NCBI RefSeq assembly: GCF_001194135.2
Contig: NC_068994.1
Coordinates: forward strand, 4,684,280-4,748,279
DNA: 64,000 nucleotides
Direction: 5' to 3'
Origin: Octopus bimaculoides
Taxonomy: Eukaryota
Position 1 is the stretch's first letter, and each line of letters starts with the position of its first letter. This document shows, piece by piece, positions 1,070 through 51,700 of the stretch. The notes beneath the pieces are model-generated. The model was not told where the DNA came from and ran no database searches. It saw only the letters and a list, made by a program, of their open reading frames with translations. The translations under genes and the position numbers were made by a program.

Positions 1070-1071
<2 letters not shown>

Positions 1072-1143
<72 letters not shown>

Positions 1144-1220
1144 AAGAAGAAGAAGAAGAAGAAGAAGAAGAAGAAGAAGAAGAACAACAACAACAACAAC
1201 AACAACAATAACAATAACAT
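1072..1220. repeat. Compound microsatellite (AAT)n-(AAG)n-(AAC)n
   Basis: Directly visible; three abutting trinucleotide tracts. Confidence 0.95.
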
Positions 1221-1225
1221 TGAAA

Positions 1226-1366
1226 AATACCTTAGGAATGAGAACCCAGGTTTGAAATTTCCCCAAGACACCTGATGAAGGCTGGAGGGTATATCAGCAG
1301 AAATGTGTTTAACAACGAACAAGATGAGGACAAATATCTGTCAAATGTATATAATGTAAATAATGT
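1226..1366 (+). mobile_element. Probable Penelope-like terminal-repeat fragment with a degenerate hammerhead motif
   Basis: GACAC-CTGATGA-A-GGCTG-(10 nt)-CAGCA-GAAA-T-GTGTT at 1267-1309. The PLE assignment rests on the known association of PLE terminal repeats with minimal hammerheads. Confidence 0.45.
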
Positions 1367-2443: not shown

Positions 2444-2503
2444 ATCATCATCATCATCATCATCATCATTATAGTTATTATTATTATTATTATTATGATT
2501 ATT

Positions 2504-2553
<50 letters not shown>

Positions 2554-2593
2554 TATAGTTATTATGATTATTATTATGATTATTATTATGATT

Positions 2594-2637
<44 letters not shown>

Positions 2638-3266
2638 TATAGTTATTATTATTATTATTATGATTATTATTATTATNNNNNNNNNNNNNNNNNNNNNNNN
2701 NNNNNNNNNNNNNNNNNNNNNNNNNNNNNNNNNNNNNNNNNNNNNNNNNNNNNNNNNNNNNNNNNNNNNNNNNNNNNNNNNNNNNNNNNNNNNNNNNNNN
2801 NNNNNNNNNNNNNNNNNNNNNNNNNNNNNNNNNNNNNNNNNNNNNNNNNNNNNNNNNNNNNNNNNNNNNNNNNNNNNNNNNNNNNNNNNNNNNNNNNNNN
2901 NNNNNNNNNNNNNNNNNNNNNNNNNNNNNNNNNNNNNNNNNNNNNNNNNNNNNNNNNNNNNNNNNNNNNNNNNNNNNNNNNNNNNNNNNNNNNNNNNNNN
3001 NNNNNNNNNNNNNNNNNNNNNNNNNNNNNNNNNNNNNNNNNNNNNNNNNNNNNNNNNNNNNNNNNNNNNNNNNNNNNNNNNNNNNNNNNNNNNNNNNNNN
3101 NNNNNNNNNNNNNNNNNNNNNNNNNNNNNNNNNNNNNNNNNNNNNNNNNNNNNNNNNNNNNNNNNNNNNNNNNNNNNNNNNNNNNNNNNNNNNNNNNNNN
3201 NNNNNNNNNNNNNNNNNNNNNNNNNNNNNNNNNNNNNNNNNNNNNNNNNNNNNNNNNNNNNNNNNN

Positions 3267-3310
<44 letters not shown>

Positions 3311-3430
3311 TATAGTTATTATTATTATTATTATGATTATTATTATTATGATTATTATTATGATTATTATTATTATGATTATTATTATGATTATTATTAT
3401 TATCATTATTATTATTATTATCATCATCAT
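2444..3430. repeat. Higher-order (CAT)n/(TAT)n compound microsatellite spanning an N-gap
   Basis: The unit (CAT)n-TATAGT-(TAT)n-GAT... recurs three times before the gap and once after it. Confidence 0.9.
2677..3266. other. Assembly gap (others: 29472-29632, 34014-34310, 36702-36748, 39275-39668, 52009-52018, 52576-52705, 61025-61034)
   Basis: Runs of N. Confidence 0.99.
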
Positions 3431-5999: not shown

Positions 6000-6310
6000 C
6001 TGTGATCCAAAACAGAAAATCCGGCCGGAACTTCTTACGTCTTGCCACAGTTAACTCCCCTGACTCGATGATGGCTCTCTTTGCTTTCCATAACTGTTCA
6101 GTCTTATTTTCGAGACATTTTGTCACTTGTAGACCAGACAGAGTCGTTGTCGGCGGCCTATCCACCCCCATGTCGGAGTTGTGAGCTAGAGAGAAAGTAC
6201 AGCCGGGAACAGAAAGTGTCGAAACCAAAGGCCTGCTCTCCATTCCGAGCATTTACAGTCGACTGGGGGGACGGCTTGCTCTAAGTACACAGAGACATTC
6301 ATCCGAAAGG
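6000..6310 (+). other. Putative non-coding exon, possibly a ZNF-A 5' UTR exon (5' boundary uncertain)
   Basis: Relatively CpG-rich unique sequence ending in the consensus donor AGG|GTAAGT (6311-16). Confidence 0.35.
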
Positions 6311-7230
6311 GTAAGTGCCCTGACCATTCACACACACACACACACATTACTTGATCGCCTACACACAGACACATCATCTCACTGTACCAATATATACAGA
6401 AACACACACACCAACTACAGAAAGGCAATCGCGGGTGTATTTCTATAGTCGTGTACATATGGCTATAGAGAGATAAATTCACACAAAATTGAACATATGC
6501 GTATGTATATATGTATGTATATATATAATGACATGTATTTATGTATAACTAACATGCTTATTAGTTAATTAAAATCAATGATGAATTAACATATGTGCGT
6601 GTATGCGTGTGTGTACGTGCGTGTATGTGTGTAAGCATTTGTACTTGTGTCTATCAAAAATGTTTTCATAAATATATATATATATATATATATATACTGT
6701 GTATGTTTGAATTTGCTGGCTTTATATGAAATTATTTAAAAGTTCATGTGTAATGTGTGATCAAGCGGTTGGCGCGGGGTAAAAAAAAATAAACAAACAA
6801 GTGAAACTGTAGCTGCTAATGAATACATCCATATATATGGGTGTGTATATATATATATATATGGAGCTGTCTACATTGTTTGACACCGGTCCGACGACAG
6901 GTCCAATTACCACCACTATCATCATTATCATAATTAAATGCTCTTTCTTACTGTCTGCTATTTTAAGTCCCACCATCCATTCATACGTCCACCCATACAC
7001 CCACTGCACTTTGTGTCAGTTCAAACACATCCACCCACTGCTGCTCTCTCGCCATTTACTGAATTCTTTTAAAAGTCCGTTCGTCGTTTTTAAAACAATG
7101 GTTTTTGTCTGAAGACACTAAAACACAAACACACACACACACACACATCTACTCAGTCACACGTCAGAACGCATACAGGCATTCGTATAAATCTGTATTC
7201 ACAATTTAATATACACACACAAATTCAGTT

Positions 7231-7268
<38 letters not shown>

Positions 7269-8936
7269 TGAAAGAGAGAGCGGAAGGTGGGACACACGCG
7301 CGCCCGCACGCTCATACATTCAGGGAGTGGGAGGGAGAGAGAGAGACGAGCTAGAACTGGAATGGCCGTCAGTCCATTAGCGGCGATATATCATCAACCT
7401 CCACTACCACCACCATCATCATCATCACCATTTACTGGACTGAAGTAGAGGAAGTGGGAGGAACAGTTTGCCTTCCTTCATGTCCCCCCCCCTTAATCAC
7501 TGTTCTCTTTTATGAAAGTAGCCACCATCACCACCGTCTCTTTGTCTTTCTCTCTCAGTCCACCACACTGCTAATAAATTGACATTTCGTTTTCTTGTTG
7601 GGGGTTAGTCTATGTGTCTATGTATATATTTCTGCGCGCGCGTGTGTGTGTTTATGAATAGCTATAGCAATGTGTATTCATTTAATACACCTTGACAGTC
7701 GGTTTTCATCTACCCATATCCTGCGATCCGGTTTCAATCCTCAGCTACATCATCTTTGAACAATCCAAATCGCATTTTCCCACCACTTTTACAAATTCAA
7801 CAACCATTTTCCCTCCACACTCCACATATGTAATGTATGTGTGTGTGTAGACGCAATGTTGAATGCTTACAAATAAGTTTTCTCGGTGTGTAAAGTACGT
7901 GTGTAGAGCAGCGAGTATAAATATCTCTCACCTTTATGTAGGGGGTCGGGGCTGGGGCCTCTAGAGTTCATTGACGCAGCCTCGTCCCAGCCCTTCCCAT
8001 CCGACCAATTAAACTTTGATAAAATCTGAACATGGTTTTGTTTATCTTTTACTTGTCTCAGTCATTAGACTGAGGCACTGTCTCGATGAATGTCTAGTCG
8101 AACAAATCGGTCTCAGTACTTTTTTTTTTTCTAAAGCCCATTACTTATTCTGTTAGTTCTATTTGCCGAACCGCTTGATGACGGGCACGTAAACACACCA
8201 ACACCGGTTGTCATGCTGTGGTGGGGGACAAACACTGACATAAAGACAAACAAAAACACGCACCTATCTATTTGTCTATCAATGAATATAATATATATAC
8301 ACACATGACGGGATTCTTTCAGTTTCCGTCTACCAAATCCACTCACAAGGTTCTGGTCGGCCTAAGGCTATAGTAGAAGGTACTTGCTCAAGGTATCACG
8401 CAGCGGCACTGAAATCGGGAGTACGATTACCCTGTTGGGTTCTGTGCATCCCCAACTCAACTCTGATAAGAAAACACTTATCATAGGCCGTGCCCATCCA
8501 GTCTTTTGACAGTCTCAGTATGTTTATTTTTATTTTTCCATGTTGACCCAGCGTAATTTGAGAGATTTGCCTGCTATTTCTAACAGATAGAGCCACCATG
8601 TAGTGACACCCTTGTTGTTCACCTATAAGTTTTGAAGTTGTTCATGTATGTTGCAGTTTAACCCCCCCACCCAGTCGCCTGGCGTTTCAGCCATAACCAC
8701 CCCCAACGATTTCTCTTGTATATTCTCTTTTTAAGATGTCAGGGTTTAATACGAAAGAAATTCGGCTCCTATTTTAGAAGACCGATCCCGTATATATGTC
8801 TCCCTCGCTGGCTTGATGCCTGTATTTACATATTAACTTTTAGAGTGTTTGTTCAACTTTTGGAATGGTTGTTTTCGTAATCTTTTCCGCCTTCTGGTAT
8901 CACTTGTAGTGAGTATGGAGTTGTATTATGGATGGA

Positions 8937-9218
8937 CAGTGGCGGACTGGCTAGGTTGCCAGCTTTGGCCGATGGCAAGTGGGTCCCTTCGCCATTAGAA
9001 TCCACATATGGGGAGGGGGCCCATCCCCTCGAGTTTGGGAATTTTTTATTCACTCCTGGAAGGATGCATTATTTCAACCTGTCTGTGTTTGTAGACAGTT
9101 GAAAAGAATACTTTAAACCAAAAAAAAAAAAAGGAAAAATTAAATGATAGCATTGTAGTTGCGGGTGGGCCCCCTTACTTTCCTGGCGACCAATATTTTT
9201 AGACCCAGTCCGCCACTG
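8937..9218. mobile_element. hAT-type MITE (282 bp)
   Basis: Perfect 14-bp TIR CAGTGGCGGACTGG / CCAGTCCGCCACTG. The 8-bp flanks TGGATGGA / TAGATGCA match 6/8, consistent with a decayed TSD. Confidence 0.75.
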
Positions 9219-9257
9219 TAGATGCATGTTTCTTTTTAATTGCCAACCACTCGTTCA

Positions 9258-9295
<38 letters not shown>

Positions 9296-9689
9296 GGCTG
9301 TGTAGTTTAGTTTCTGTTCTCTCTGGCAATACATACACACACACATCATGTATGTGTGTGTGTATGTAATGTGCATACATCTGTTTATGTGTGTGTGTGT
9401 GTGTACTAATTAAACAACTATGTTGTCTGTATGTGTGCTGCATGTGTCGATGATGATTTTATTCAGGTCTTCCCCTGCTTTCCCCACCCTTAAACAGTCT
9501 GTAATAAGGAGACATCTATTAACTGTCCCTACTGTTACTCTGCTCCGTCCTTCGCCCCTGTCCCTAACCACTCTCTCACCACGCCACTGACCAGCCTTTG
9601 TCCGTCCTCTTCCAGTTAACTGACCTCTCGTAACTGTCTAAACAAGAACCTGCTAACGCCACGACATTTTTACGAGTCACCGAGGGAGC

Positions 9690-10090
9690 CTCAACCCAAC
9701 CACTCGATCTACTAGAAATAGCAGTCCCAACTCCCTCAAAATTGCCGTCTTGAAAAAAGGATACATTGGATAATGGGAGCCTTGGTTCCCTGCATGTAGT
9801 AAAAAGAGGGGATGGTTACGGCTGGAATACTTTTGATCTGAGGTCTGATGGATCGAAGCTGACCGAAACAACATCAATCATGACACCTACAAGACAGTGA
9901 AAGAGCTTCTATGTGGCCACTCAACCTGCTAGAAATAGTAACCAATTCTCTTTCAAGTCACACTCTATCTCCTTAAAGAAATGGAAGTACACATTGGACA
10001 ATGTAGTCATAAATATACAAAAATGACTGGATGGTCACTGCTGGAATGTCGTTTGACCAGGACAGACCTAAATAATAGCATTCACCTAAA
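9690..10090 (+). mobile_element. Interspersed repeat family D (GCTAGAAATAGCAGCCAAAT...GATGGTCACGGCTGGAA), two tandem copies
   Basis: The same motif recurs at about 17810-17975, 18225-18425, 26420-26570 (-), 26820-27020, 27560-27740 (-), 27755-27950, 40920-41110 (-), 60330-60500 and 60820-61015. Confidence 0.7.
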
Positions 10091-12289
10091 CTTACTCCAC
10101 AATCGTCTTCAGCCACTTCTTCAATTAGTGAAGGTTGATTGTATAATTAGTAATGGGGAGTTCTTTCATTACATTTGTTTGTTTTTATGTCTGTTTTTTC
10201 CATCCTGGCATGGGCTAGATGAGTACATAATATTGAGGTATTGTTTTGCAACTGGATGCTCTTTCTGTCACTGTCATGCACACATTTTTAAGTAAGGGAT
10301 TTCTTATTTCACATATCTTTGAAAGCATGAAGCTAATGGACAGTTTGTTGATAGAAAATATAACAAGACTATCACCACATGTTGCTTGCAGTTTTTGGAG
10401 AAATATGAAAATAAACAAATATGCAGATGCACATGCATTCACACATGCGTCCCTTACTTGAACAGCACATATGGATCATGTGAGCTACCAGCAGTCGTCT
10501 CAGAACTGAGCTCTGATGGTCCACAGCAAGTTTTATGTCCTTACTGTGTTGTTGCATTTGTATTTGATGGCTCGTGAAGTTTCCTTGTGAATTTTGTGGA
10601 CCATTTTCTGTAAAAAGTTTAGCATTAATATCACTTCGCTAGAGATCAGAAATTGTATCCATTTGTCTGCATTGGAAACAATTCCTCTTGGACAAGAAGA
10701 CCCGTCTTCTACCATGCCTGCTGACCTTATCAATTCAATTCTTACTTCACTGCCTCCCATTAAACTTTGTATTCATGATGATGATCATCATCTTTTAACT
10801 TCCACTTTCCCTGCTGGCATGAGTTGGGCGGTTTCACAGGGGCTGGCCAGGCTCCTATTGTCTGTTTTAGCTTGGTTCTTATGGCCGGATGTCCTTCCCA
10901 AAGCCAATCACTTTAAAGAGAGTGCTGGGTGCACTTACGTAGCACTGGCGCAAGTGCGTTTTATATGGCACTAGCACCTCTCAGCTGGGAGAGGGGATGG
11001 GGCCATGGGCATAAAGGACATGCCAGTATGTATGGATTGGTCATAATTTTACTTAGCTTGACATGCCTTCTCAAGTACTGCAAATTGCCACAAGTCATGG
11101 TCCCTTGTCAAATTGCCATAAGTCCGGGTCCCTTGTCCCAAGTATATATATAATTAAAATTAATCAAAGGACATACTAAGTATGTCTACCTGCTAGAAAT
11201 AACAGTCAAAACTCTTATTTAAATCGCCAAAGTACACTGATAATAACTACAGAAATCAACCATCTGAATGCAATCTCCCAACGTACATTCATGGGTTGGG
11301 TGAATATATTAATGACATGGATTTTACAGCCAGATGCCCTTCTTGAGTTGAGAATTTGCTTCTCAACAGCATGATTTCATGTTCAGTCCTGCTGTGTGGA
11401 ACTTTGGGCAAGTGTCTTCTATTACAACTTTCTTATGTGGTGCCGGCACAGGTGTCTTTTACATGGCACCAGCACGGGTGGTTTTTATGCGAACACCAGC
11501 ATCCGTTTCCAATATTTTTTGAAAGGGCATCTGGTCGTAGAAAATCTGTCTCAGTAAACTCCATCCGACCCATGCAGTCATGGAAAGAGGGTTACTAAAA
11601 TAATAATTGATATGTATATAAGCAAGCATATGTGTGTGTGTACAATTATACTTTTATACAACAATCTGTATTTGAGATTTGCTCTAGCCTTCTTCTTCTG
11701 TCCTGGTTTAATTTTCTTCCTCTTTCTTGCTTACTTGCAGATGGCAACAGCGTGATGTCCAACTCGGCGGGAGATATGAAAGACCAAAGAAAGCCGTGAT
11801 GCATGGCTGATCATTCGGGCGAACAACTAATATGGTGGCTATTCAATGTTGTCTGTGTATTAACACAGAGGGGATGGGGAGCCAGGCGTGCCCTCTGGTG
11901 ATCACATCCTTCTAGTCCCTTACTGGTTCATGATGACACCTTGGCTTGCGGGGTAAAGTCTTTCTGGCCACAACGCAACACTTCAGTTGCGCCCAAGTTT
12001 TATTTATGTCCCAACAGCAATAGTAGCAACACAAAATAATACAAAAATAACAGTTACAACAACAACAACAATAATAATTGAATAATAATAACAATAATAA
12101 TTATGATGCCAGTGGTTATTCTCCTATTTTCTTACTACCTCTTTGTTTAGGTAACGAGCTAATGAACTTGATATTGCGGTATTAGATATTAGCATGCTTA
12201 ATTGTGAGAAGTGGCTCCTTTTAATTAACAAATAAATTGCTCTATCGTGCTGACATCATCAATATCAGCTGTATTATAGCTATACATAC

Positions 12290-12350
<61 letters not shown>

Positions 12351-14817
12351 CAAGAGAGTGTGGCATACAGATTTGCAATAACGAACCATCCATCCAAATT
12401 ATAAGAAGTAATTAATTACGATGCTAACAATATCCATTGATATTGAATATAATTGCAGTAACATAAACTAAATTTGATAAAACTGCAGTGGTGATCGTGT
12501 GGTCTCTGAAAGCACTATCAATCTCAGTCTCCTTTGAACGGTCACATTAGCTGTGATATCACTGTCTGCAAACACTAAAACAGTTATTGTTCCATTTGAT
12601 AACAATTTTAGATATATTCTGCCCTGTATCTCGATGTCCACAGCACTGATTGTAGTGATATCAGCTTCTGTTAAACAATATCTTTGAGACAATAACACCA
12701 GGTCTGTCATATAAACTTCTACAAACAATGAAACTCCCATGGTAATAATGTTATTTTAACAAACATCAATACTATTACATACCACATCAAACACTGCATC
12801 ATCATTATTATTATTTAAGTAATTATTATTATTATTATGTAAGGAATTATTATTATTATTTAAGAACTTATTATTTAATATTGTAGGCCAGTTAATTGAT
12901 GATATCGTTATCATTATCATTATTATTTAACTTGTCATTGCGTGAGAACACACGATGACAAACCGATTTTGCCGGGCTCAATAAAAAAAAAAAAACAGAA
13001 ACCAATCAGTCAAGACTTGGCTGTTGACAAGACCCTTCCCTGTCCCTTGCCTGTTTTTATTATTATTATTCACTGTTCTGTTAAAGAATGGAATATTCTT
13101 TAATAATCTAGGATAATTGTTAACGAAAGATGATGACAATATTGTATGAGAACACGAACAATATTGTTACAAAATCTCCTAAATGTTTGCAATTAGCGAC
13201 CCTGTCAACATATTTCTAACAGATGTGTGGTATTAAGACGAAAACAGAGGCCTTGTTAACTCCCTACCAGCAGACGTTGTGTCGAAGGTGAAGTAGAGAC
13301 TCTTGTGAACACACTTTCAAAAATTTCTTTGTTCTGAGAACTAAAGCAGTCCTTGTTACTATGCACTTGACAGATCTGTATTGTCTGCTGCTGTCCTGGC
13401 ATGAGGCCGACATCGTGAAAATAGGGTGTAACAACCTCACCTGAACTTCAGTTGTCAAACCCAACAACAGCACTCAGGGGACCTAACAAATAAACTGCAA
13501 ATTAGGTGCGTTTGTGTGTGTATATATAATATATATGTATATATATATGCACATTTACACACATAATATATTTTCTTTATTTTATTGAGGTTCTTTTTGC
13601 TGAGTGCAGTTAAGAGGAACATCAGCAACTGCAACAACAATAACAAACACTACACTAAGTGTACCTAATCTGATCTCTCTCCTCCCCCCGCCACCACCAC
13701 CACCCTCTTAAAAGTCGTCCCTGGGGAAAGAAAGGTTCGTATTAGCAATTATTTTTAGTTTGTCTCGTCAAGTTAAGGCTTCTTCTTTTAACGACCCACC
13801 CCTAAACACTGACACACACACACACAGTTTCTTTTCTTTTGTTTTTGCAGTGTTTTTTTTTTTCTATTGTTAATTAAATTTTGTTTTCGTTTTTGTTGAC
13901 TGAAAACTGCTACTACTGCTACTACTGCTACTAGTATTCTTCTGTGACTAGTGCAGACGTTAGTCAGTCAACGTAGATGCTTTAATTGTATCCAGCTCAG
14001 TGTCTCGCTGTTTCTGAGTTCAGTTCATACCTGGCTACAGGGAGCAACATTGCCTTTCATCCCTCCAGGGTCGATCAAACAACCACCAGTAACATATACC
14101 AGAGTTCAGCTGTATATGCTCCTCCCCCACTAAATGTGGCTGTCTACCTACTGAAGGCAAACAAGCAGCTTATCATTATCATTATTAGTATCATCACCTA
14201 ACCTACAACAAGGTCAGTATTTGGTGCCCTTGGCCACAACACAAAGCCAGGGTTTGCCCATCCCTCGGTAAGACACTTATTGTCATCAATATTATCCTCA
14301 ACAGTAAGATACGTTCATACTTTGCTGCCAGAATCATTACTTTATTATTATTATTATTATTAATTACTCGTCAAGTGTAATTGACAGCTGAGCAAAACGT
14401 CCCATCTCTGTTACATTTCTGAGTTCTTGTCTTCAGAAGAACAACAGTGATTCCTGTCACTGAAGCCTCTTGTGTTAGTGTCAGTTCAAGACAATAGAAG
14501 TCGTTAATTAAAATAGTTAGATAATTCCATATTTACTGAAGACAATCTTAAGAGTTTCCAGTTTTATATTTGCTGGGATTTTCCTGCTTTTGAAAGACAA
14601 CAGGAGATATCACATATATATTAATTTATTAGCTCACAATTATGTCTGAGTAAAGGTGACATATTTTTTTAAAAAGCCAATATAGTTTAAGAAAACCAAG
14701 AACTGAACTGAACAAAATAAAAGGATTGTTTTAATTATAATTAATAATTCTGTAATTATAAATAAGGTATTTTAGGCTATTTAACTAAGGGCAGAGTTCT
14801 CCTATCTCTTCTTCAAG

Positions 14818-16170
14818 ATGTGTTCTAATTCAGCTGTACAATACCCTCCCATTACAAACCATGTGAACTACCACGCCTGCAGTTTAGCATACTCTCAGGT
14901 CGGCATCACTCCCTCCTACCTCAGTTATAAGCAGAGGTATATCGAAAAGAAACCCTATAAATGCAATATCTGCCGTAAGCGGTTTGCATTGAGAGCCTAC
15001 CTGAAAAAGCATGAAATGGCTCCTGAGGCCGGCAAACATTTCACATGTATGTTTTGCGGCAAAGCTTTCCCGGAGCGTGACAAACTGCGTAATCATGAAC
15101 GTACTCACACCGGTGAGAGACCCTTCCCTTGTGAGCTTTGCGATATGGCTTTTGCTCAGAAAGACAAGTTGAAGATCCATCAACTGACTCACACCGGCAG
15201 TAAACCCTTTCAGTGTACCATATGCCACAAAGCCTTCTCTAGAAACGATAAACTTAAAATACACACCCGTTCTCACACAGGAGAGCGGCCTTTTGAATGC
15301 TTAATTTGTCGTCGCGCGTTCTCTCGCAACGACAAGTTAAAGCTGCATCAGCGGTCGCACACGGGTGAAAAACCATTTGAGTGCCCTGTTTGTCAACGGT
15401 GTTTTTCACGCAATGACAAGCTGAAAATCCATGAGAGATCACATACAGGTGAGAAACCGTTTAGCTGTGGGATTTGTCAGAAAGCTTTCTCTCGTAAGGA
15501 CAAGATGAAAATTCATGAATTCACACACAGTGGGGAAAAGCCATTTAGTTGTTCGCTTTGCTCAAAGTCCTTCTCTCGCAAGGACAAACTAAAATTGCAC
15601 GAGTTTACGCATTCAGGACAGAAGCCTTACAGTTGCGAAATATGCCGCCGTGCATTCTCTCGCAACGACAAGCTGAAGTTGCACCAGCGCACACACATAG
15701 CCAGTGCCATGGGTACAGAGGAGAACAAGATGAACAAATGCGACAAAGATTGCACCATGGCTGCTGCTACTGCACCACCGCCACCGCAACGATGTAACAC
15801 TGATAAACACAGCCAGTGTCACGCAGGGAACCATGCTGTCACCACACTGGTTGCATCTGCACCAACTTCGGTGCAGTCTTCGTCTATGATACCAACACCA
15901 GCTGCATGTTCACACCAAAGAATGCCCTCTCACTTGCCACATCTGCCACAGTTACCACCACTCACCCTCAATTCTCCTCCCATGGCTACGGCCTGCTCTC
16001 ACCAGATGTCGGCTTTGAACAACTTCAACTGGAAGAGGAATGTTCCCCCCATGACGTCTACATGGACTACAAACTGGGGTAACACCCTCAGCGTGCCGTC
16101 CTACAGCATCGGACAGAGGAAGTGTGAGAACCAAGAAGCAGTACACAGCATTCAAACCTTAATGCACTAA
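14818..16170 (+). CDS. C2H2 zinc-finger protein ZNF-A (450 aa; 9 fingers, finger 1 lacks the second His; His/Pro/Ser-rich C-terminus)
   Basis: Uninterrupted ORF with tandem C-x2-C-x3-F-x5-L-x2-H-x3-H units and TGE(K/R)P linkers. ATG directly follows a pyrimidine tract + AG (14816-17). AATAAA at 16397-16402. Confidence 0.92.
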   Translation: MCSNSAVQYPPITNHVNYHACSLAYSQVGITPSYLSYKQRYIEKKPYKCNICRKRFALRAYLKKHEMAPEAGKHFTCMFCGKAFPERDKLRNHERTHTGERPFPCELCDMAFAQKDKLKIHQLTHTGSKPFQCTICHKAFSRNDKLKIHTRSHTGERPFECLICRRAFSRNDKLKLHQRSHTGEKPFECPVCQRCFSRNDKLKIHERSHTGEKPFSCGICQKAFSRKDKMKIHEFTHSGEKPFSCSLCSKSFSRKDKLKLHEFTHSGQKPYSCEICRRAFSRNDKLKLHQRTHIASAMGTEENKMNKCDKDCTMAAATAPPPPQRCNTDKHSQCHAGNHAVTTLVASAPTSVQSSSMIPTPAACSHQRMPSHLPHLPQLPPLTLNSPPMATACSHQMSALNNFNWKRNVPPMTSTWTTNWGNTLSVPSYSIGQRKCENQEAVHSIQTLMH

Positions 16171-16792
16171 CTGACAACCCAGCCTGCCCTCTGTGAGGCT
16201 TCTCAAATCTGACAGTAAACTACTACATCATTGAATGTTGGTAGCTAACCACCCCAGCCAGCCAGCTATGCCCTGCCACTACCTGTGGCTCGGCTGTCCT
16301 AATGTCTACAACATGAACAACTCAACTCTGTATAAAAACAAACCCACCCTTAATCGACCCATTGTAATGATTTCACCATTGTATATGTCTCCAGTCAATA
16401 AAGTCTGATACCCAGTGGCTCCTCCCCCACTGGATACAGCACCATTTTACCAGCATTAAAACTGACAAACCACTGATCATGTGTGTTTACATACATACAT
16501 ATATGTTTTCTTTTTCTATTATTAATAATTGGCAGAATTTATAGAGTGACTCTAGGGCTGCGGGTTTTGTGTATTGGCACAGAGTTTTAATAAGTGCCAA
16601 TACACGGAAAACTCTTGGCTTTAGAGTTGCTCTCTAACTTTCACTGATTATTAATAATAATAAAACAAAAAATATATGTATGTATACTCATGTTTTGAGT
16701 TCTATTTTCCTATTTGTATCACCAAACATATACATATATATACATATATATATATATTTGTGTGTGCGTGTTTGCATGTTGTTGATCTAGGT

Positions 16793-19653: not shown

Positions 19654-20975
19654 TATGTATGCATATAAGAATCTTTTCTACTATAGGTACAAGGTCTGGA
19701 TTTTGTGGGAAAGGGGACAGTTGATCACATCAACCCCAGTATGCAACTGGTACTTGATTTATCAACCTGGAAAGGATGAAAAGCAAAGTCAACCTCGGCG
19801 GAATTTGAACTCAGAACGTAGCGGCTGATGAAATACCGCGAAGTATTTTGCCTGGCATGCTAACGATTCTGCCAGCTTGCCAACTTAATCATCATCATCA
19901 TCATCGTTTAACGTCCACTTTCCATGCTGGCATGGGTTGGACGACTTGACTGAGGACTGGTGAACCAGGTGGCTCCAATCTGATTTGGCATGTAAGAATA
20001 ATATAACAAGGATGGAGAATATAGGTTTTAATAGCAAATCACATTTGTTTCTGCACCAAACACCAGCTTTAAGTTGTTGAGTTTACATTTATGTCTCATT
20101 ATGTGAGAATATTCTTTAGAATCATTCGATAATTAAATATTTTTCAGCAACAGCTGTGTGTGTGTGCTTGCTCAGGTGGAATGTGATCAATGCTTAATCG
20201 CATTCCACCTGAGCAAGCATCCACACAGCTGTTGCTGTAAAATATTTAATTATATATATATATATGCGTGGCTGTTGCCAGTACCGCCTGACTGGCCTTC
20301 GTGCGGGTGACACGTAAAAGCACTCACTACACTCTCAGTGGTTGACATTAGGAAGGGCATCCAGCTGTAGAAACTCTGCTAAATCAGATTGGAGCCTGGT
20401 GTAGCCATCTGGTTCACCAGTCCTCAGTCAAATCGTCCAACCCATGCTAGCATGGAAAGCAGACGTTAAACGATGATGATGTGTGTGTGTGTGTGTCCCA
20501 CCACCTCTACTTGACAATTGGCATTGGCTTCTTCACGTCCCTGTAACCGAGCAGTTCAACAAAAAAAACAATATAATAAGTATCGGGCTTCGTTTGACTA
20601 AAATTTCTTCAAGGCAGTGCCCCAGCTTTTTACATGGTACCAGCACCCACAAGCTCACAGGTCAAGTATTTCTCCCAAAGTGCTGGACAGTAGGACTGAA
20701 CTCAATATCACATGGTTAGGAAGCAAGCTTCTTACTCAAAGCCATGCCAGCATCTATGAGTGTTTATTGTTGGATTTGAAAACAAATTACATACTGGATT
20801 ATAATGCTTACCATCCTGAGAGCATGTACAGCACTCCCTTGGACACCCAGATTATACACAAGTAAATACTTCTTTTGTCACAAACTGATTTATTTAAGTG
20901 TCATGTTGTGTAGGCCATGTCTGCCCCTCGACTGAGTTTGATCCATAGACCTATAGTTTTCGGACATGTCATACT

Positions 20976-21962
20976 TCTGACGAACTGGCCCTCACAGCAG
21001 AATCACTACCAGAACTAGAGAAGAAACTTCAAGTGTGGAAGCAAGGTTTAGAATCAAAGGGCCTTAGAGTCAATGTTGCAAAGACCATAGTTCTAGTAAG
21101 TAGGAAGGCAAACACATCACACACCCCTTCAGATAATAGCTCGATCTGTAGAAAAGGTGTAGGTAGAAACTCCATAACATGTACCTAGTGTAAGCTATGG
21201 ACACGTAAGAGGTGCAGCAAAATCAAAGGAAGATTAACTGGGAAGATAGCTTTTGTGTGCAGCAGATGCACAGGGGCAATAAACACCACAGATACTCAGA
21301 AAACAGACCCCATCACATGCCAGGGGGAGAAACTAGAAGTAGTTGATAGTTTCCGCTACCTAGGTGACAGAGCCTGTAGGGGAGGGATGCTCAGAGAGTG
21401 TTACCACTAGAATAAGAATAACCTGGGCAAAGTTCAGAAAGCTTCTACCCCTACTGGCAACAAAGGGCCTCTTGCTCAGAGTAAAAGGTAGATTGTATGA
21501 TGCATGTGTGCTAATTGCCATGCTACACAGCAGTGAAACATGGGCCTTAACAGCTGAAGACATGCGTAAGCTTGAAAGAAATTAAGCTAGCATGATCCGC
21601 TGGATGTGTAATGTCAGTGTGCTCACACAACAGAGTGTAAGTGCCCTGAGAGAAATGTTGGACACAGAAGCATTGGATGTACCTTGGATCGTAGGGTGAC
21701 ATGCCGTGCGTGAGGAGACCTATTGAGTCAAGTACATCAACATCAGAATCAAAGCAAATGGAAATTGTAGTTGTGACCCCCATGCTGGTGGCACATAAAA
21801 AGCACCCACTACATTCTTGGAGTGGTTGGCATTAGGAAGGGCATCCAGCTGTAGAAACACTGCCAGATCAGACTGGAGCCTGGTGCAGCCTCCTGGCTTC
21901 CCAGACCCCAGTCGAACCGTCCAACCCATGCCAGCATGGAAAACAGACGTTAAACAATGATG
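20976..21962 (+). mobile_element. 5'-truncated, internally deleted RTE-type LINE remnant (RT C-terminal half plus 3' UTR ending GACGTTAAAC-(GAT)n-like)
   Basis: Translation DELALTAESLPELEKKLQVWKQGLESKGLRVNVAKT...VVDSFRYLGD, then (frameshift) GCSESVTTRIRITWAKFRKLLPLL...MLHSSETWALT, matches non-LTR RT domains 5-7 and the downstream RTE-type region. 21680-21790 is homologous to the reverse complement of about 52880-53080. Confidence 0.85.
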
Positions 21963-22817
21963 ATTGTGGCTGATGTGCAGTTTCAACATCTGTGAGTTGA
22001 TGTCTGAGAGTAAAAAATATTGGTAGAGGTGGGGGTGGGGACTAGATGCAGCTTAATAAAATTGGTGGCTGGTTCCGGGGTGCATCAGCTGTTATAGAAG
22101 CAGTAGAAAACTTAGAATAAACAGCATGTCTGGGAAATGGTGAACTGTTTGTTGACCCTTCTTCCCCCATTCTCCAATTCCATTCTGACAGAGCAGAGCG
22201 ACCAATGACCAAGACACTCCAGCGGAGACCCTTCCATCCAGGCAAGGTTGCTGTCAGTGTGTCCATTTGTATGAAGGTAAGGAATGGTTTGAGGCAGATT
22301 TGGCTGCTTTTTCTAGCTGGTCTGATGAAGCTCACTCACTGACTCACGAGTCAGTGAGTGTAGTTTGTTGGTGAGTCTTTGTTAATGAGGTAGACATCAT
22401 CAGACAGCTCTTATTAGTTCATATTTTTGTTGATATGATCTAATGGTTTCTTCCATGAGTGCTTACCAACTCTTGTATCCCCAAACCAGTACTCTATCTG
22501 GTATTTGAAATTAATAGGGGTCAGAAACTGGTGAGGCCTGAAGGGTTTGATAACATAAGTTATCCACTGCAGAGCTGAAAAATCCTTTAAAAAAGAACAA
22601 ATACAAACAAAAAGGAAAACACTTGACTCAACAAAAGGCATAAAAATGAATGAATAAAACAAAAAGGAAATGTAATTTTATTCCCCTTAATCACACCTGT
22701 TTGGTGAAGTGACCCCTATGATACCATAGATTGATAAGGTCTGGAGATAACAGTGTTTTTTTTTCTCTTCTTTTTCTTTAGCAAAGCACCCGACATCACA
22801 GATCTGAAATACATATA

Positions 22818-23124: not shown

Positions 23125-23820
23125 TTAGGTGTTCCTTGTATGCACACGTTGGTGTTTTTTTAAATCACTACTTTGAGAATATTGTGCAGGACACAATTCA
23201 CATTTGAAAGGTTTTTCACTGCTATGGCTCATTCGATGTCGCTTCAAGAGACTGTATGTAGAGAAAGCAGCCGGACAAACTTCACACTGGAACGGTTTCT
23301 CACCTGTGTGTGTCCGGTGGTGCTGCTTCAGTGAAGAATTCCTAGAGAAAGCAGCTGAACAATAATCGCATTTATAGGGTTTCTCACCGGTGTGGATCAT
23401 GCGATGTTTCTTGAGGTCACAGTTTTGAGTGAACGCTGCTGAACAAAGGTCACACTTGAACGGCTTCAAGCCTGTGTGATTCATGTGGTGACGTTTGAGT
23501 AAACTACGCGTCGAGAATGCAGAGGGGCACTCTTCGCATTTGAATGGTTTCTGCCCTGTATGAGTGAGGCCGTGTTGTTTGAGAGAACTGTTGCGTGAAA
23601 ACGCTGCCCCACACGTGTAGCAGGTGAATGGTTTCTCCCCTGTATGAATCATGTTGTGTTTCTTTAGATCACTGCTCTGTAAGAACGCAGCAGAGCATAC
23701 ATTGCACTGGTATGGTCGCTGACCCTCGTGGATCAACTTGTGCCGTCTTAAGAGACTCAACGTTGATAACGAAGAACCACATATCTGACAGTGACACATC
23801 TTGACCAATACATCAGCCAT
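23125..23820 (-). CDS. C2H2 zinc-finger protein ZNF-B (231 aa; 8 fingers, almost no non-finger sequence)
   Basis: Intact ORF with 8 tandem fingers and TGEKP-type linkers. An in-frame TGA at 23836-38 closes the frame upstream, so an extra coding exon would need a nearby acceptor. Candidate AATAAA (minus strand) at 22677-82. Confidence 0.9.
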   Translation of the reverse strand: MADVLVKMCHCQICGSSLSTLSLLRRHKLIHEGQRPYQCNVCSAAFLQSSDLKKHNMIHTGEKPFTCYTCGAAFSRNSSLKQHGLTHTGQKPFKCEECPSAFSTRSLLKRHHMNHTGLKPFKCDLCSAAFTQNCDLKKHRMIHTGEKPYKCDYCSAAFSRNSSLKQHHRTHTGEKPFQCEVCPAAFSTYSLLKRHRMSHSSEKPFKCELCPAQYSQSSDLKKHQRVHTRNT

Positions 23821-48770: not shown

Positions 48771-51700
48771 AGGCTGGGATGGTGGTGGTGGAATGTAGGG
48801 TGAAATAATGGATGGGTAGTAGTCAGAGGATATGGAAGAAGCAATTTGTCACGGTTGGTTTGGTCCAGCATGGTTGAGAGGTCAGAGGTTCTTGTTTCAG
48901 TGCTGCTTTTTAATTTGGGTTGAGGGCACAGAAAGCCAGCAATTGGAGCTCACACACACACACACGCAATCATAGCCATTTAAAAGTACATAGAGAAACA
49001 CGAAAACACGTGTCTACATACACATACATATATACACATATGTACACACACACAAACATTTAAAAACACATATCGACTCACATATCCAGGATTGTACATA
49101 CAACACACCTACATTACACAGCCATGTTACACTCACTCTCCCATACTTCTACCCATCCATACGTGCATCCAGCATACTTATAAACATCAATTCAACCATA
49201 CATACACATCCATCCAGAAAGACAGGCAGACAGACAGAGCTAGCAAGTTATGAATCACTGTTTTATTTTTTTTAATTCTATGGCTCCTCACCCCTTCACA
49301 CCCCTCTTATGTTAACTATGGATTCATCCATCCTCTCGCTATCCTTCAAGCCCCTTCCTATGGCCTTCCTGTCTACAATAAAGGGAATAAGATACTGATC
49401 AAGAGTGGAAAAGGGGAAAAGGGTGTTGGTTTCGCTAGGGATGGCAGAGAGGGATGTAGTGAACAATGGACGGACACACATATACACAGACAGGGGGAGT
49501 AGATAGAGGTGAAAGAAAGAAACTACAGACAACGCTTCCTCCCCGCTGTACACTGCCATTGCTGGATAAGAAAGGAAGGAGGAAGTGCATGAGGAGAAGG
49601 AAGAGGAGAAAATAAGGGTGGACAGGTTGAGATGACAGAAATATATAGAGAGAGGTTTCAGTACGTAAGGCTTAAGTTGTGTATGTATGTATGTATGTGT
49701 GAGAGACAGAGTGTGAGTGAGAGAAAGAGAGAGTGTGTGTGTGTGTTTGTATAACTTTGTGAATAATGTATTATAAATGGGTTAGTATTATTTATAAATA
49801 GATTAATATTGTTTATATAGATATATACAATTTGTACAATTTACAGATATATATAATTAGCTGCAATGTAATTTATTAGGATTAATATGTGCTTGTAAAT
49901 GCCGTATAACACACACACAAACACACACTATTGTGGTACTAGTCAAATATGACAGGGTACGTTTTGTTTCCTTTCAGTAATTCAGCTCTTTGCATCACGC
50001 AAAGTGCCATTTTCTTCTTGTGTTTCATTCTGTCTTCTTTTAGTTATTCTTTTTAACTCAAGCCATATTGTCCTTCTGTCACACTCCATCTCTCTAATTC
50101 CCATTGAGAATTGGCTTTTGGGGAAAATCTTGAACGTCTTTCTTCTCTTCAAAGTTGACCAGTTTCTCCGTAACTCAAAATTTCTTTGTTCCACTTGAAG
50201 TTACCTTTTTTAAACTCATGCACTCTTACTCACCATCACCATCACCATTTAATGTCCATGTATCATGCTGGCACAAGTTGTATGGCTTGACAGGATCTAG
50301 GGGGTCCATGGGCTGCATTGTGCTCTAGCGTCTGGTTTGGTATGGTTTCTATGGCTGGATGCTTTTCCTAATGCAAGCCACGTTAAAGCATGGACAGGGT
50401 CTTTTTTTCATGCCATCAACACTACTGACGTCACCTTGCAGCTTACAAGATTATAACCTCTGAAGCAGGTGAGAGGGACAACCTTATTCTAGGAGAATAA
50501 GGAGTAGAGAAGGATGAGAGAAAAGGGCTGGAGAAGAATGGGTTTCTTGATGTAAGGGAGCTACATGACTACTTCATTATTCACAATCACAACCATATTT
50601 CATTATTTCTTCTCTCTCTCTCTCTCCTCTATCAAAATCACCTACCACCTATTCTCTTCCCGAATACATTTCTTCAATATCATACATACATAATTTTCTC
50701 TCTGTTTTTCTAACATTCATTCACTCTCTACAATTCTTTTATTTTATTTTGTTACTTCTTTCACCCCTCTATTGTATGGGAGCCAGTCAAGTGGCACTGG
50801 CAATGACCATGCTCGAATGGCGCTTTTTACGTGCCACTGGCATGGGAGCCAGTCAGGTAGCACTGGTGTTAAAATCCCCACTGGGGAAGGGTGCGGTAGC
50901 AACCACTTTGAGAACCTATGACTTAGAATAAGATCTATCCTGAGCCCTAGAACTCGTTACGGTTGGGCCTTAATCCAGTTTCCTTGATACATAAATGAAT
51001 GAGATCACCATCCCCTAAGGATGGTGGTCTGTCACAGAGTTAACCTCCCAGCTATAATTTACCGCTGATTGGGCTGGAACAACACGAAATGAAGTGTCTT
51101 GCTCAAGAATACAATGCAAGGTCAGGAATTGAAACCATGGTCTTACAATCCAGTATGCAATATCCAAACCACCAGATGATATGCCTTCACAGTAGGCATC
51201 AGCATCTTTTATATTTTACTTGTTTCAATCATTGACTGTGGCCATGCTGGGGCACCGCCTTCAAGTATTTTTAAGTTGAATGAATCGGCTGCAGTTCTTT
51301 TTTTTTTTAAAGCCAGGTTTTATTCTATCAGTCTGTTTTGTTGAACTGCTAGGTTATGGGGATGTAAACACATTAACACCAATTGTTCGGTGGTGGTGGT
51401 GGTGGTGGGGACAAACACAGACACAAAAACACACAAACATATTATCACCATCATCATCCTCATTTAACGTCCATTCTCCATGCTGGCATGGGTTGGACAG
51501 TTTGACTGGGCTGGCACACTGGAAGGCTGCACGAGACCCCAGTCTCATTTGGCATGGTTTTCTACAGCTGGATGCCTTTCCTAATGCCGTGAGGGTAACG
51601 GGTGCTTTTACGTGCCACTGGCATGGGTGCCATTTGCATGACACTGGGGTGCTATTACGTGCCGAATATATATATATATATATAGATAGATATATGATAG

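What the first reader, a model, noticed from the sequence alone, without database searches (positions are those of the whole stretch)
15208..15696. ZNF-A: six consecutive fingers with the same recognition helix, a candidate (TGG)n / G-tract reader
Seen: fingers 4-9 all read R-[N/K]-D-K-[L/M]-K-[I/L]-H. The frameworks differ (TICHKA, LICRRA, PVCQRC, GICQKA, SLCSKS, EICRRA) and the helix codons differ synonymously (aga aac gat aaa ctt; cgc aac gac aag tta; cgt aag gac aag atg). That argues for selection on the helix, not recent duplication. Established: engineered R-S-D-K helices bind xGG (RSDKLVR for GGG, RSDKLTE for CGG), and Asp at +2 favours G/T at the adjacent base. Inference: the target is about 18 bp of (TGG)n or poly-G. 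(TGG)6 occurs at 51391-51408 and (TGG)4 at 59021-32, both inside SINE-B bodies, and (TGG)5 at 414-428.
Basis: partly seen in the sequence, partly recalled or inferred. Interest (0 to 1): 0.8.

Follow-up and report, generated by a model that had tools for sequence, protein, structure and literature searches.

The report
Octopus zinc-finger gene, six identical fingers
An intact octopus zinc-finger gene carries six adjacent fingers whose DNA-reading residues have been kept identical by selection for a very long time, which predicts, but does not prove, that it reads G-rich DNA with a three-base period such as (TGG)n.

Summary
Window 15208-15696 encodes fingers 4-9 of a 450-codon open frame (14818-16170, +) in Octopus bimaculoides chromosome CM046614.1. 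All six helices read R-[N/K]-D-K-[L/M]-K-[I/L].

Between these fingers, synonymous sites are fully randomised (same codon 0.438 observed, 0.428 expected), so the shared helix is not a recent duplication or gene conversion.

New context:
- ZNF-A is an old paralogue of a five-finger octopus gene (XP_052828934.1). It shares that gene's N-terminus, an atypical first finger and a C-terminal motif, and has four extra fingers.
- An 11-finger relative with the same D-K-L helix core has identical helices in Argonauta and an Octopus-like octopod.
- This is therefore a small, slowly evolving octopod family, not a fast-evolving array.

The DNA target is still a prediction. The nearly identical helix RQDKLKV of human ZBTB7A finger 2 contacts two guanines in crystal structures, so 5'-(G/T)GG-3' per finger is reasonable.

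The link to (TGG)n inside SINE-like elements is circumstantial. I could not find an orthologue of ZNF-A itself. I rate this a moderately interesting new variant of a known kind.

The parts
14818..16170 (+). ZNF-A coding sequence, 450 codons plus stop. It is probably one complete coding exon.
   Evidence: This is the only long + strand ORF in the area. It has 0 stops in frame, against 18 and 30 in the other two frames. Pfam finds zf-C2H2 with 9 stretches, E 2.7e-43. The start Met aligns with the start Met of the single-exon paralogue XP_052828934.1.
14800..14817 (+). Polypyrimidine tract plus AG directly before the ATG (ctcctatctcttcttcaag). It is a possible 3' splice site of a 5'-UTR intron, or of an upstream coding exon.
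   Evidence: Read directly from the sequence. The frame is closed 11 codons upstream. A gene call with a 1385-aa product ends at 16170 and runs upstream beyond 13125.
14956..15039 (+). Finger 1, atypical: C-x2-C-x12-H-x8-H, YKCNICRKRFALRAYLKKHEMAPEAGKH.
   Evidence: Read. It is nearly identical in the paralogues P0317 and P0316.
15040..15192 (+). Fingers 2 and 3, with helices ERDKLRN and QKDKLKI. They share the D-K-L core but have a different -1 residue.
   Evidence: They align one-to-one with fingers 2 and 3 of P0317.
15208..15696 (+). Fingers 4-9, the finding: six consecutive fingers with R-1, D+2, K+3 and I/L+6. Helix codons (-1..+6) lie at 15241-15261, 15325-15345, 15409-15429, 15493-15513, 15577-15597 and 15661-15681.
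   Evidence: The linkers are TGERP, TGEKP, TGEKP, SGEKP and SGQKP.
16030..16164 (+). Conserved C-terminal motif, W-K-R-N ... P-S-Y-x-x-G-Q-R-K-x-x-N-Q ... I-Q-x-L-M. Its function is unknown.
   Evidence: It is shared with P0317 (O. bimaculoides) and P0316 (O. vulgaris), although the intervening tail is unalignable. The tail has no other homologue.
16397..16402 (+). AATAAA, a candidate polyadenylation signal starting 227 nt after the stop codon.
   Evidence: This is sequence only; no transcript evidence was available.
51388..51411 (+). Best match in the window to the predicted site: CGG (TGG)6 GGA, inside a SINE-like repeat. It is a candidate target only.
   Evidence: Zero mismatches to (KGG)6. 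The next triplet, GGA, fits the finger 3 prediction KGA. The following CAA does not fit finger 2. The element is repeated in the window.
13682..13708 (-). G-rich period-3 tract GGGTGGTGGTGGTGGCGGGGGG, 1.1 kb upstream of the ZNF-A ATG. It is a candidate site only.
   Evidence: One mismatch to (KGG)6. A link to ZNF-A is pure speculation.

Best explanation
ZNF-A is a functional, single-coding-exon C2H2 transcription-factor gene of Octopus bimaculoides. It belongs to a small, old octopod family whose fingers share an Asp+2 / Lys+3 / Leu+4 helix core.

Origin. It descends from a five-finger ancestor like XP_052828934.1, through ancient internal amplification of the RNDKLKI finger. Purifying selection has since held the base-contacting residues identical in six consecutive fingers.

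Inferred mechanism. Each of fingers 4-9 docks in the major groove of double-stranded DNA and reads a 3-bp subsite, 5'-(G/T)-G-G-3':
- Arg-1 bonds the 3' guanine.
- Lys+3 bonds the middle guanine.
- Asp+2 braces the Arg and contacts C or A opposite the 5' base of the neighbouring subsite.
- Ile/Leu+6 gives at most a van der Waals contact, which favours T.

With canonical TGEKP-type linkers, the six fingers would read up to 18 bp of G-rich DNA with a 3-bp period, (KGG)n. Fingers 3 and 2 would add about KGA and AGN on the 3' side.

Shown: the gene, the fingers, their age, the selection and the family.
Inferred: the DNA target, and that all six fingers engage together.
Unknown: the effector function and the biological targets.
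For: Intact ORF. All 32 zinc ligands of the eight canonical fingers are present, and Pfam zf-C2H2 matches 9 stretches.

Age and selection.
- Same-codon use between fingers is 0.438, against 0.428 expected.
- ZNF-A versus paralogue P0317 has pS 0.87 (saturated) and dN 0.22 over aa 36-182.
- The O. bimaculoides / O. vulgaris orthologue pair of that paralogue has dS only 0.18 and dN 0.016.

Family.
- ZNF-A shares its N-terminus, atypical finger 1, fingers 2-4 and C-terminal motif with P0317 and P0316.
- P0317 lies 455 kb away on the same chromosome.
- The 11-finger relative P0315/P0050/P0060 has 8 D-K helices. All its helices are identical between Argonauta hians and an Octopus-like octopod: helix pN 0.005, dS saturated, overall dN/dS 0.036.

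Rarity. R-1/D+2/K+3 occurs in 0.28% of 5423 comparison fingers.

Mechanism by analogy.
- ZBTB7A finger 2, RQDKLKV, shares 5 of 7 helix residues with RNDKLKI (Q/N at +1, V/I at +6). In crystals it reads GG, with Asp+2 on the cross-strand C and no contact from Val+6 (PMC8553545; sequence check).
- Arg, Lys and His recognise guanine; the Arg-Asp pair and hydrophobic-to-thymine-methyl contacts are reviewed in PMC12264921.
- RSDKLTE is assigned to CGG (PMC2278136).
Against: - There are no binding data of any kind.
- Long arrays often use only a subset of fingers for base-specific contact. ZBTB7A finger 3 acts as a spacer.
- Lys+3 can swing to a guanine on the other strand, so the middle base may be less strict than G.
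- Ile/Leu+6 gives little specificity, so the 5' base is soft.
- No orthologue of ZNF-A itself was recovered, so direct cross-species conservation of the six helices is unshown.
- No transcript with exactly this product is on record.
- An annotated 1385-aa gene model ends at this stop codon, so an unseen N-terminal part cannot be excluded.
Confidence: 0.55

Rival explanations
1. ZNF-A is an ordinary G-box promoter or enhancer factor. Only three or four fingers make specific contacts to a short G-rich box such as GGGTGG, as in Sp/KLF, EGR/WT1 or ZBTB7A. The remaining identical fingers add non-specific affinity, allow register sliding on G-rich DNA, or serve other partners. The target is then not a microsatellite.
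For: The five-finger paralogue P0317 has the same helix types (ERDKLKI, RKDKLKN, RNDKLKI, RKDHLNK). It is predicted to read a short G-rich box and is under strong constraint, dN/dS about 0.09 between Octopus species. ZBTB7A needs only fingers 1-2 for binding and must find its register among repeated G runs.
Against: Six fingers have kept R-1, D+2 and K+3 invariant through saturation of synonymous sites. That is hard to explain if most of them make no base contacts. Spacer fingers normally lose these residues.
Confidence: 0.25
2. ZNF-A is a transposon-directed repressor. It targets the (TGG)n tract embedded in an abundant octopus SINE-like element, as KRAB zinc-finger proteins target transposable elements in tetrapods.
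For: - (TGG)2-6 sits at a fixed position in a SINE-like element that has several copies in the window.
- The best (KGG)6 match in the window is in such a copy, and its next triplet fits finger 3.
- SINEs dominate the octopus repeat landscape (PMC9068888).
Against: - The family is old and slowly evolving, not in an arms race.
- No KRAB or other repressor domain is present in the ORF.
- The TGG tract is short or absent in most copies of the element.
- TGG repeats are not unusually common among microsatellites here.
- Simple repeats are poor identifiers of one transposon family.
Confidence: 0.1
3. The fingers do not read double-stranded DNA. The very basic helices (R, K, K, plus K or N) instead bind G-rich single-stranded DNA or RNA or a structured nucleic acid, or they mediate protein contacts.
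For: There are weak Pfam cross-hits to dsRNA-type fingers: zf-C2H2_jaz 2.1e-08 and zf-met 2.9e-07. (TGG)n and G-tracts can form non-B structures (general knowledge).
Against: - These Pfam hits are ordinary cross-matches of any C2H2 array and have no stretch passing on its own.
- Canonical TGEKP-type linkers join all of fingers 2-9. Such linkers mark DNA-binding arrays (general knowledge).
- The Arg-1/Asp+2 pair is a hallmark of duplex-DNA G recognition.
Confidence: 0.07
4. It is a dead or never-expressed copy, and the pattern has no present function.
For: No exact product is on record in assemblies or transcript-derived contigs, and no orthologue was found.
Against: The frame is open for 450 codons with every zinc ligand intact, although the internal duplications are old enough to have randomised synonymous sites. 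Non-synonymous divergence from the paralogue is far below synonymous divergence. The database hides cluster members behind representatives, so absence from the hit list is weak evidence.
Confidence: 0.03

Closest known systems
Human ZBTB7A (LRF/Pokemon) zinc finger 2, helix RQDKLKV (PDB 7EYI, 7N5W and others)
   Same: It has the same Arg-1, Asp+2, Lys+3, Leu+4 and Lys+5, and an aliphatic residue at +6. In crystals the finger reads two guanines, Asp+2 reaches the cross-strand cytosine of the next triplet, and +6 makes no base contact. It is the best solved model for what one ZNF-A finger does.
   Different: ZBTB7A has one such finger among four different ones, plus a BTB domain. ZNF-A has six in a row and no BTB domain in its ORF. 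The two are not orthologous.
Octopus bimaculoides XP_052828934.1 ('Krueppel homolog 1-like', P0317) and O. vulgaris CAI9733359.1 (P0316)
   Same: They share with ZNF-A the N-terminal region, atypical finger 1, fingers 2-4 with D-K-L helices and the C-terminal WKRN...PSY..GQRK motif. They also have a single coding exon and lie on the same chromosome. These are true paralogues.
   Different: They have five fingers, not nine, and the last finger is RKDHLNK. Synonymous sites between them and ZNF-A are saturated. Neither protein has been characterised, to my knowledge.
Octopod 11-finger protein XP_014771513.2 / Argonauta hians GAB1604198.1 (P0315, P0050, P0060)
   Same: Eight of its 11 main fingers carry x-x-D-K-L-x-[I/V/L], and six of them have Arg at -1. 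The helices are invariant between Argonauta and an Octopus-like octopod. This shows the helix type is an old, constrained family trait.
   Different: It has a different N-terminus and C-terminus. Its helices alternate R, Q and H at -1 rather than being identical. It is only 53% identical to ZNF-A over the fingers.
Engineered modular fingers for xGG triplets (RSDKLVR for GGG, RSDKLTE for CGG), and synthetic arrays built to bind trinucleotide repeats such as the poly-CAG binders for huntingtin
   Same: They use the same R-x-D-K-L helix logic for GG. RSDKLTE is assigned to CGG in PMC2278136. RSDKLVR for GGG is from my own knowledge of the Barbas modules. A synthetic ZF repressor that binds expanded CAG-repeat DNA was built (PMC5013590 abstract). 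That it consists of repeated near-identical fingers is from my own knowledge.
   Different: Those are designed proteins. ZNF-A would be a natural, selection-maintained counterpart, with an aliphatic +6 rather than Arg or Glu.
Sp/KLF, EGR1/Zif268 and WT1 G-rich box readers
   Same: They use an Arg-1/Asp+2 pair reading G, with a cross-strand contact to the next triplet.
   Different: They have three or four different fingers, usually with His or Glu at +3 and Arg at +6. ZNF-A's architecture and flanks do not match.
Fast-evolving poly-ZNF arrays with repeated fingers (PRDM9, KRAB-ZNFs)
   Same: They are tandem fingers arising by internal duplication, with 3-bp periodic motifs.
   Different: In those arrays the repeats are young at the DNA level and the contact residues are the most variable positions (general knowledge). 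Here the DNA is saturated and the contact residues are the most conserved.

Membership tests
Classical C2H2 zinc finger (Pfam PF00096), tandem array | C-x2-4-C-x12-H-x3-5-H with a conserved Phe and Leu core, repeated in tandem | tested here: met
   PF00096 scores E 2.7e-43 with 9 stretches, and PF13465 scores 4.9e-59. A regex finds 8 canonical fingers at 15046-15696. Finger 1 has H-x8-H and is atypical.
Classical C2H2 zinc finger (Pfam PF00096), tandem array | TGEKP-type linkers between fingers, the mark of DNA-binding arrays | tested here: met
   The linkers are TGERP, TGSKP, TGERP, TGEKP, TGEKP, SGEKP and SGQKP.
Octopod D+2/K+3/L+4 zinc-finger family (XP_052828934.1 type) | Shared N-terminal segment with atypical finger 1 (KKPYKCN.CRKRF.LRAYLKKHE.APE.GKH) and fingers 2-4 ERDKL.. 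/ .KDKLK. / RNDKLKI | tested here: met
   In the three-way alignment, 73% of aa 36-182 are identical.
Octopod D+2/K+3/L+4 zinc-finger family (XP_052828934.1 type) | Shared C-terminal motif WKRN...PSY..GQRK..NQ...IQ.LM | tested here: met
   The columns are invariant in the alignment of ZNF-A, P0317 and P0316.
Octopod D+2/K+3/L+4 zinc-finger family (XP_052828934.1 type) | Orthologue of ZNF-A with the same six helices in other octopods | not testable with these tools
   No hit is above 53% identity, the tail finds nothing, and the exact product is not on record. The database shows only cluster representatives and hid even the paralogue P0317. No cephalopod DNA collection can be searched.
KRAB zinc-finger proteins | N-terminal KRAB domain (PF01352) | tested here: not met
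   There is no PF01352 hit in the 450-aa ORF. Only 46 residues precede finger 1. Upstream exons of the 1385-aa model could not be read.
BTB-ZF (ZBTB7A family) | N-terminal BTB/POZ domain with a C-terminal array of a few fingers | tested here: not met
   There is no BTB hit, and there are nine fingers. The similarity is confined to the helix of one finger.
Sp/KLF family | Exactly three C-terminal fingers with fixed helices | tested here: not met
   There are nine fingers followed by a 157-aa tail, and the helices differ.
Sequence-specific reader of (KGG)n duplex DNA (a functional class, not a family) | Demonstrated preferential binding to GG-containing period-3 DNA | not testable with these tools
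   There is only inference from the recognition code and the ZBTB7A finger 2 structure.

The most novel reading that the evidence does not exclude
ZNF-A would be a natural, selection-maintained homotypic zinc-finger array that reads a trinucleotide repeat, (TGG)n/(CCA)n, using all six identical fingers in register. It would be one example of a wider octopus habit of building arrays with periodic recognition helices. The other two ZNF genes in this window have helix periods of 3 and 4 fingers, which predict 9- and 12-bp DNA periods. Together these arrays would then read tandem or simple repeats, including those embedded in the dominant SINE-like elements.
Probability: 0.2. Interest if true: 0.7.

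Novelty: new variant of a known kind. Interest (0 to 1): 0.45.

Why it matters
Tandem zinc-finger arrays are normally thought of as strings of different fingers whose contact residues diversify fastest. Here the contact residues are the most conserved part, and six neighbours are kept identical over a time long enough to randomise every synonymous site.

If the prediction holds, it would give three things:
- a natural protein that measures the length or presence of a G-rich trinucleotide repeat;
- a simple test case for how many fingers of a long array can engage at once;
- a first functional handle on the very large, unexplored octopus C2H2 expansion.

If it fails, the six identical basic helices must be conserved for a reason other than canonical triplet reading, and that would also be informative.

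Tried and rejected
1. Full-length homologue search and the exhaustive representative search with fingers 4-9. Both were swamped by long poly-ZNF proteins, because summed finger scores dominate. They were useful only as a background set of 5423 fingers.

2. Search with the non-finger tail, aa 294-450. It found no hit.

The two-finger profile returned only proteins under 90 aa and nothing informative.

4. Exact look-ups of the 450-aa product found nothing on record. The paralogues were found only by listing the members of P0050's cluster.

5. A recent internal duplication or gene conversion as the cause of the identical helices is rejected. Unit DNA identity is 52-68% and codon choice is random. 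TRF sees only a weak 84-nt period over 2.1 copies.

6. The idea that (TGG)n is specially enriched in the window is rejected. It is far above a shuffled-sequence expectation, but so are other microsatellites, and it ranks third among trinucleotide classes.

7. A search of the + strand upstream (1-14817) for further coding exons or fingers of the 1385-aa model found none.

8. Supplementary data of Wells et al. 2023, checked for a predicted motif of this ORF. The files held are BED lists, and no octopus file is among the first 200.

9. Literature phrase searches for natural arrays with identical recognition helices, or for TGG/GGT-repeat-binding C2H2 proteins, found no precedent. This is not proof of absence.

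10. The 2015 octopus genome paper is not held.

11. Structure prediction was not run. Without DNA it would only restate the canonical fold.
Full report
WHAT IS THERE

The window is Octopus bimaculoides chromosome CM046614.1 (assembly GCA_001194135.2). Window position w corresponds to record position 4,684,279 + w on the + strand. This follows from exact look-ups of the two other zinc-finger genes in the window.

The finding lies in a 450-codon open reading frame, 14818-16170 (+). That frame has no stop, while the other two frames of the same stretch have 18 and 30. Pfam reports zf-C2H2 with nine matched stretches (E 2.7e-43) and the double-finger model at 4.9e-59. It reports no KRAB, BTB, SCAN or other effector domain.

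A regular-expression scan of all six frames finds eight canonical fingers at 15046-15696 and no other + strand finger upstream in the window. Finger 1 (14956-15039) is atypical, with C-x2-C-x12-H-x8-H. Fingers 2-9 are joined by TGEKP-type linkers.

THE OBSERVATION

Fingers 4-9 occupy exactly 15208-15696. Their helices (-1 to +6) are RNDKLKI, RNDKLKL, RNDKLKI, RKDKMKI, RKDKLKL and RNDKLKL.

Besides the zinc ligands and the core Phe, the invariant positions are S-2, R-1, D+2, K+3 and K+5. The helix is therefore the conserved part and the beta-hairpin is the variable part. Non-synonymous difference per site is 0.14 in the helix and 0.45 at the variable framework positions. This is the reverse of ordinary poly-zinc-finger arrays.

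I used 270 poly-ZNF proteins returned by two database searches as a comparison set, 5423 fingers in all. Only 15 fingers (0.28%) combine R-1, D+2 and K+3, and 12 of these are in two octopod relatives.

IS IT RECENT DUPLICATION?

No. The 84-nt finger units are only 52-68% identical to each other, and the proportion of synonymous differences is about 0.9.

A direct test compares all pairs of fingers 4-9 at positions where the amino acid is the same. The same codon is used in 98 of 224 cases (0.438), against 0.428 expected from codon usage in the three ZNF genes of the window (0.421 with a slightly different usage table). No DNA-level trace of common ancestry is left. Gene conversion is excluded for the same reason. 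Tandem Repeats Finder sees only a weak 84-nt period over 2.1 copies.

For calibration:
- The O. bimaculoides / O. vulgaris orthologue pair of the paralogue described below has dS 0.18.
- An Octopus-like octopod versus Argonauta pair has an overall synonymous difference of 0.71.

The finger duplications are therefore several-fold older than the split between the two Octopus species. They are probably of the order of the Octopus-Argonauta split or older. That last step is my inference.

FAMILY CONTEXT (NEW)

The general homologue search gave nothing above 53% identity, and the non-finger tail gave no hit. Two of the 53% hits, P0060 (Argonauta hians) and P0050 (a Logan contig), have 11 main fingers. 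Eight of these carry x-x-D-K-L-x-[I/V/L].

Listing the members of P0050's 90% cluster revealed proteins hidden behind the representative:
- O. bimaculoides XP_014771513.2 (658 aa, the 11-finger protein);
- XP_052828934.1 (405 aa, 'Krueppel homolog 1-like', P0317);
- its O. vulgaris orthologue CAI9733359.1 (P0316);
- an older fused model of 1089 aa that joined the first two.

P0317 is a clear paralogue of ZNF-A. The two share:
- the start (M-x-x-N-x-x-V-Q);
- the segment Y.Q.YI.KKPYKCN.CRKRF.LRAYLKKHE.APE.GKHF, including the atypical finger 1;
- fingers 2-4 (ERDKL.., .KDKLK., RNDKLKI);
- a C-terminal motif WKRN...PSY..GQRK..NQ...IQ.LM.

P0317 has five fingers and ZNF-A has nine. ZNF-A therefore looks like the same scaffold with four more fingers, all of its last six being of the RNDKLK[I/L] type.

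P0317 is a single-exon coding gene 455 kb away on the opposite strand of the same chromosome. ZNF-A versus P0317 is saturated at synonymous sites (pS 0.87), with dN 0.22.

Both relatives are under strong constraint:
- P0317/P0316 have dN/dS of about 0.09.
- P0050/P0060 have overall dN/dS 0.036 and helix pN 0.005. Every helix is identical between Argonauta and the Octopus-like species.

The D-K-L helix is therefore an old family trait in a slowly evolving group, not the signature of an arms race. What is special to ZNF-A is the run of six fingers with the same -1, +2 and +3 residues.

GENE STRUCTURE

A gene call whose product has 1385 residues ends at the ZNF-A stop codon and runs upstream beyond window position 13125. 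I found no coding-looking + strand exon in 1-14817.

The ATG at 14818 is preceded by a pyrimidine tract and AG, and the frame is closed 11 codons upstream. An upstream coding exon therefore cannot be excluded.

Two facts argue that the 1385-aa model is an over-extension. The start Met aligns with the start of the single-exon paralogue. And an earlier RefSeq model wrongly fused that paralogue to its neighbour. AATAAA starts 227 nt after the stop.

No transcript evidence was available. The exact 450-aa product is not on record.

HOW IT PROBABLY WORKS

The closest solved finger is finger 2 of human ZBTB7A, RQDKLKV. In the crystal structures:
- Arg421 (-1) and Lys424 (+3) each hydrogen-bond a guanine.
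- Asp423 (+2) pairs with the Arg and accepts a bond from the cytosine opposite the first base of the next triplet.
- Val427 (+6) makes no base contact, so the finger reads two bases (PMC8553545; helix sequence checked against the PDB).

A recent review states the general rules (PMC12264921). Guanine is read by Arg, Lys or His. The Arg-Asp pair is recurrent. Ile and Val can touch thymine methyl groups.

In a ZF-Tools design, RSDKLTE is the finger for 5'-CGG (PMC2278136). RSDKLVR for GGG is my own recollection of the Barbas modules.

Applied to ZNF-A, each of fingers 4-9 should prefer 5'-(G/T)GG-3'. Read from finger 9 to finger 4, this gives (KGG)6 over 18 bp. Finger 3 (QKDKLKI) predicts about KGA, and finger 2 (ERDKLRN) about AGN or AGC.

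This is inference. Three caveats apply:
- Lys+3 is flexible and can reach the other strand.
- The 5' base is weakly specified.
- Long arrays often leave some fingers as spacers.

The invariance of R-1, D+2 and K+3 in all six fingers over a long time argues that all six make base contacts.

THE (TGG)n SITES

(TGG)4 or longer occurs at 414, 452, 13691 (-), 48780, 51391, 59021 and 62863. The pattern (KGG)6 with up to two mismatches has 17 overlapping matches at about nine loci, against 0.01 expected in shuffles.

That excess reflects the microsatellite-rich genome. TGG/CCA is only the third commonest trinucleotide class (8 loci, against 33 for AAT and 14 for ATC).

The tracts at 51391 and 59021 lie at the same place in a repeated SINE-like element. 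Copies at about 8230, 20530 (-) and 52300 (-) carry only one to three TGG-like units there.

At 51388-51411 the sequence reads CGG (TGG)6 GGA CAA. Seven of the eight predicted subsites fit and finger 2's does not. This is suggestive at most.

A G-rich period-3 tract also lies 1.1 kb upstream of the ZNF-A ATG, at 13682-13708 on the - strand.

COMPARISON AND NOVELTY

ZNF-A is a member of the classical C2H2 class and of a small octopod family that appears uncharacterised. It is not a KRAB, BTB or Sp/KLF protein.

It works like the G-reading fingers of ZBTB7A, Sp/KLF and EGR/WT1, and like engineered xGG modules. A natural array of six identical, anciently duplicated recognition helices is unusual. 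The nearest analogues I know are designed proteins such as the poly-CAG binders (PMC5013590). Phrase searches of the literature found no natural precedent, which is not proof.

I therefore call it a new variant of a known kind. The evolutionary part is well supported and the functional part is only a reasoned prediction.

VERDICT

- Observation: confirmed.
- Best explanation: a duplex-DNA reader of G-rich period-3 sequence, built on a conserved family helix. Confidence 0.55.
- Interest: 0.45.

Noticed in passing
window 23125-23820 (-): The 231-aa ZNF gene has helices with a period of three fingers: QSSDLKK / RNSSLKQ / TRSLLKR, then QNCDLKK / RNSSLKQ / TYSLLKR, then QSSDLKK. Corresponding fingers show no excess of shared codons (0.31 observed, 0.41 expected). 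This periodicity is therefore also old and kept at the protein level. It predicts a 9-bp DNA period.
   Followed up: partly
window 43684-46101 (-): The 805-aa ZNF gene has 16 fingers in a four-finger super-repeat (NQFFLK. / QKINLKN / QRGNLKL / QKINLND), which TRF sees as a 330-nt period. Some blocks are recent: finger 4 versus finger 12 is 99% identical in DNA, and 5 versus 13 is 90%. Others are 70-79% identical. Shared-codon use is 0.56 against 0.43 expected. All three ZNF genes in the window thus have periodic helices, with periods of 1, 3 and 4 fingers.
   Followed up: partly
window 13125-16170 (+) and upstream: A gene call with a 1385-aa product ends at the ZNF-A stop codon, yet no coding exon is visible upstream in the window. 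By analogy with the withdrawn 1089-aa fusion of XP_014771513 and XP_052828934, this is probably an over-extended or fused model.
   Followed up: partly
window 14956-15039 (+): Finger 1 is atypical, with eight residues between the two histidines (HEMAPEAGKH). It is conserved in the paralogue in two Octopus species, so it is probably functional. Its role is unknown.
   Followed up: no
window 16030-16164 (+): The C-terminal motif WKRN...PSY..GQRK..NQ...IQ.LM is conserved between old paralogues, while the rest of the tail is unalignable. It is a candidate effector or partner-binding motif. No family match was found.
   Followed up: no
window 13682-13708 (-): The tract GGGTGGTGGTGGTGGCGGGGGG lies 1.1 kb upstream of the ZNF-A start and has one mismatch to the predicted (KGG)6 site. 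It could be an ordinary G-rich promoter element, or a self-regulation site.
   Followed up: no
window 51280-51620 (+), with copies near 4582-4728, 8105-8254, 20307-20579, 21828-21974, 50230-50374, 52237-52359, 53810-54001, 56344-56463 and 58963-59057: This is a SINE-like repeated element, 70-88% identical between copies. Its 5' half carries a variable (TGG)1-6 tract just before GGACAAACAC.
   Followed up: partly
window 414-506 (+): A degenerate (TGG)n stretch of about 28 units at 65% match, with a 15-nt higher-order period. It is the longest G-rich period-3 DNA in the window.
   Followed up: no
window 2677-3266, 29472-29632, 34014-34310, 36702-36748, 39275-39668, 52576-52705 and two 10-nt runs: These are assembly gaps (runs of N) flanked by AT-rich and trinucleotide microsatellites. 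ORFs reported across them are artefacts.
   Followed up: no
database behaviour (clusters of P0050): The 90% clustering placed the 405-aa paralogue under a representative that does not contain its sequence, linked through an old fused model. Searches therefore could not see it. An orthologue of ZNF-A could be hidden in the same way.
   Followed up: partly
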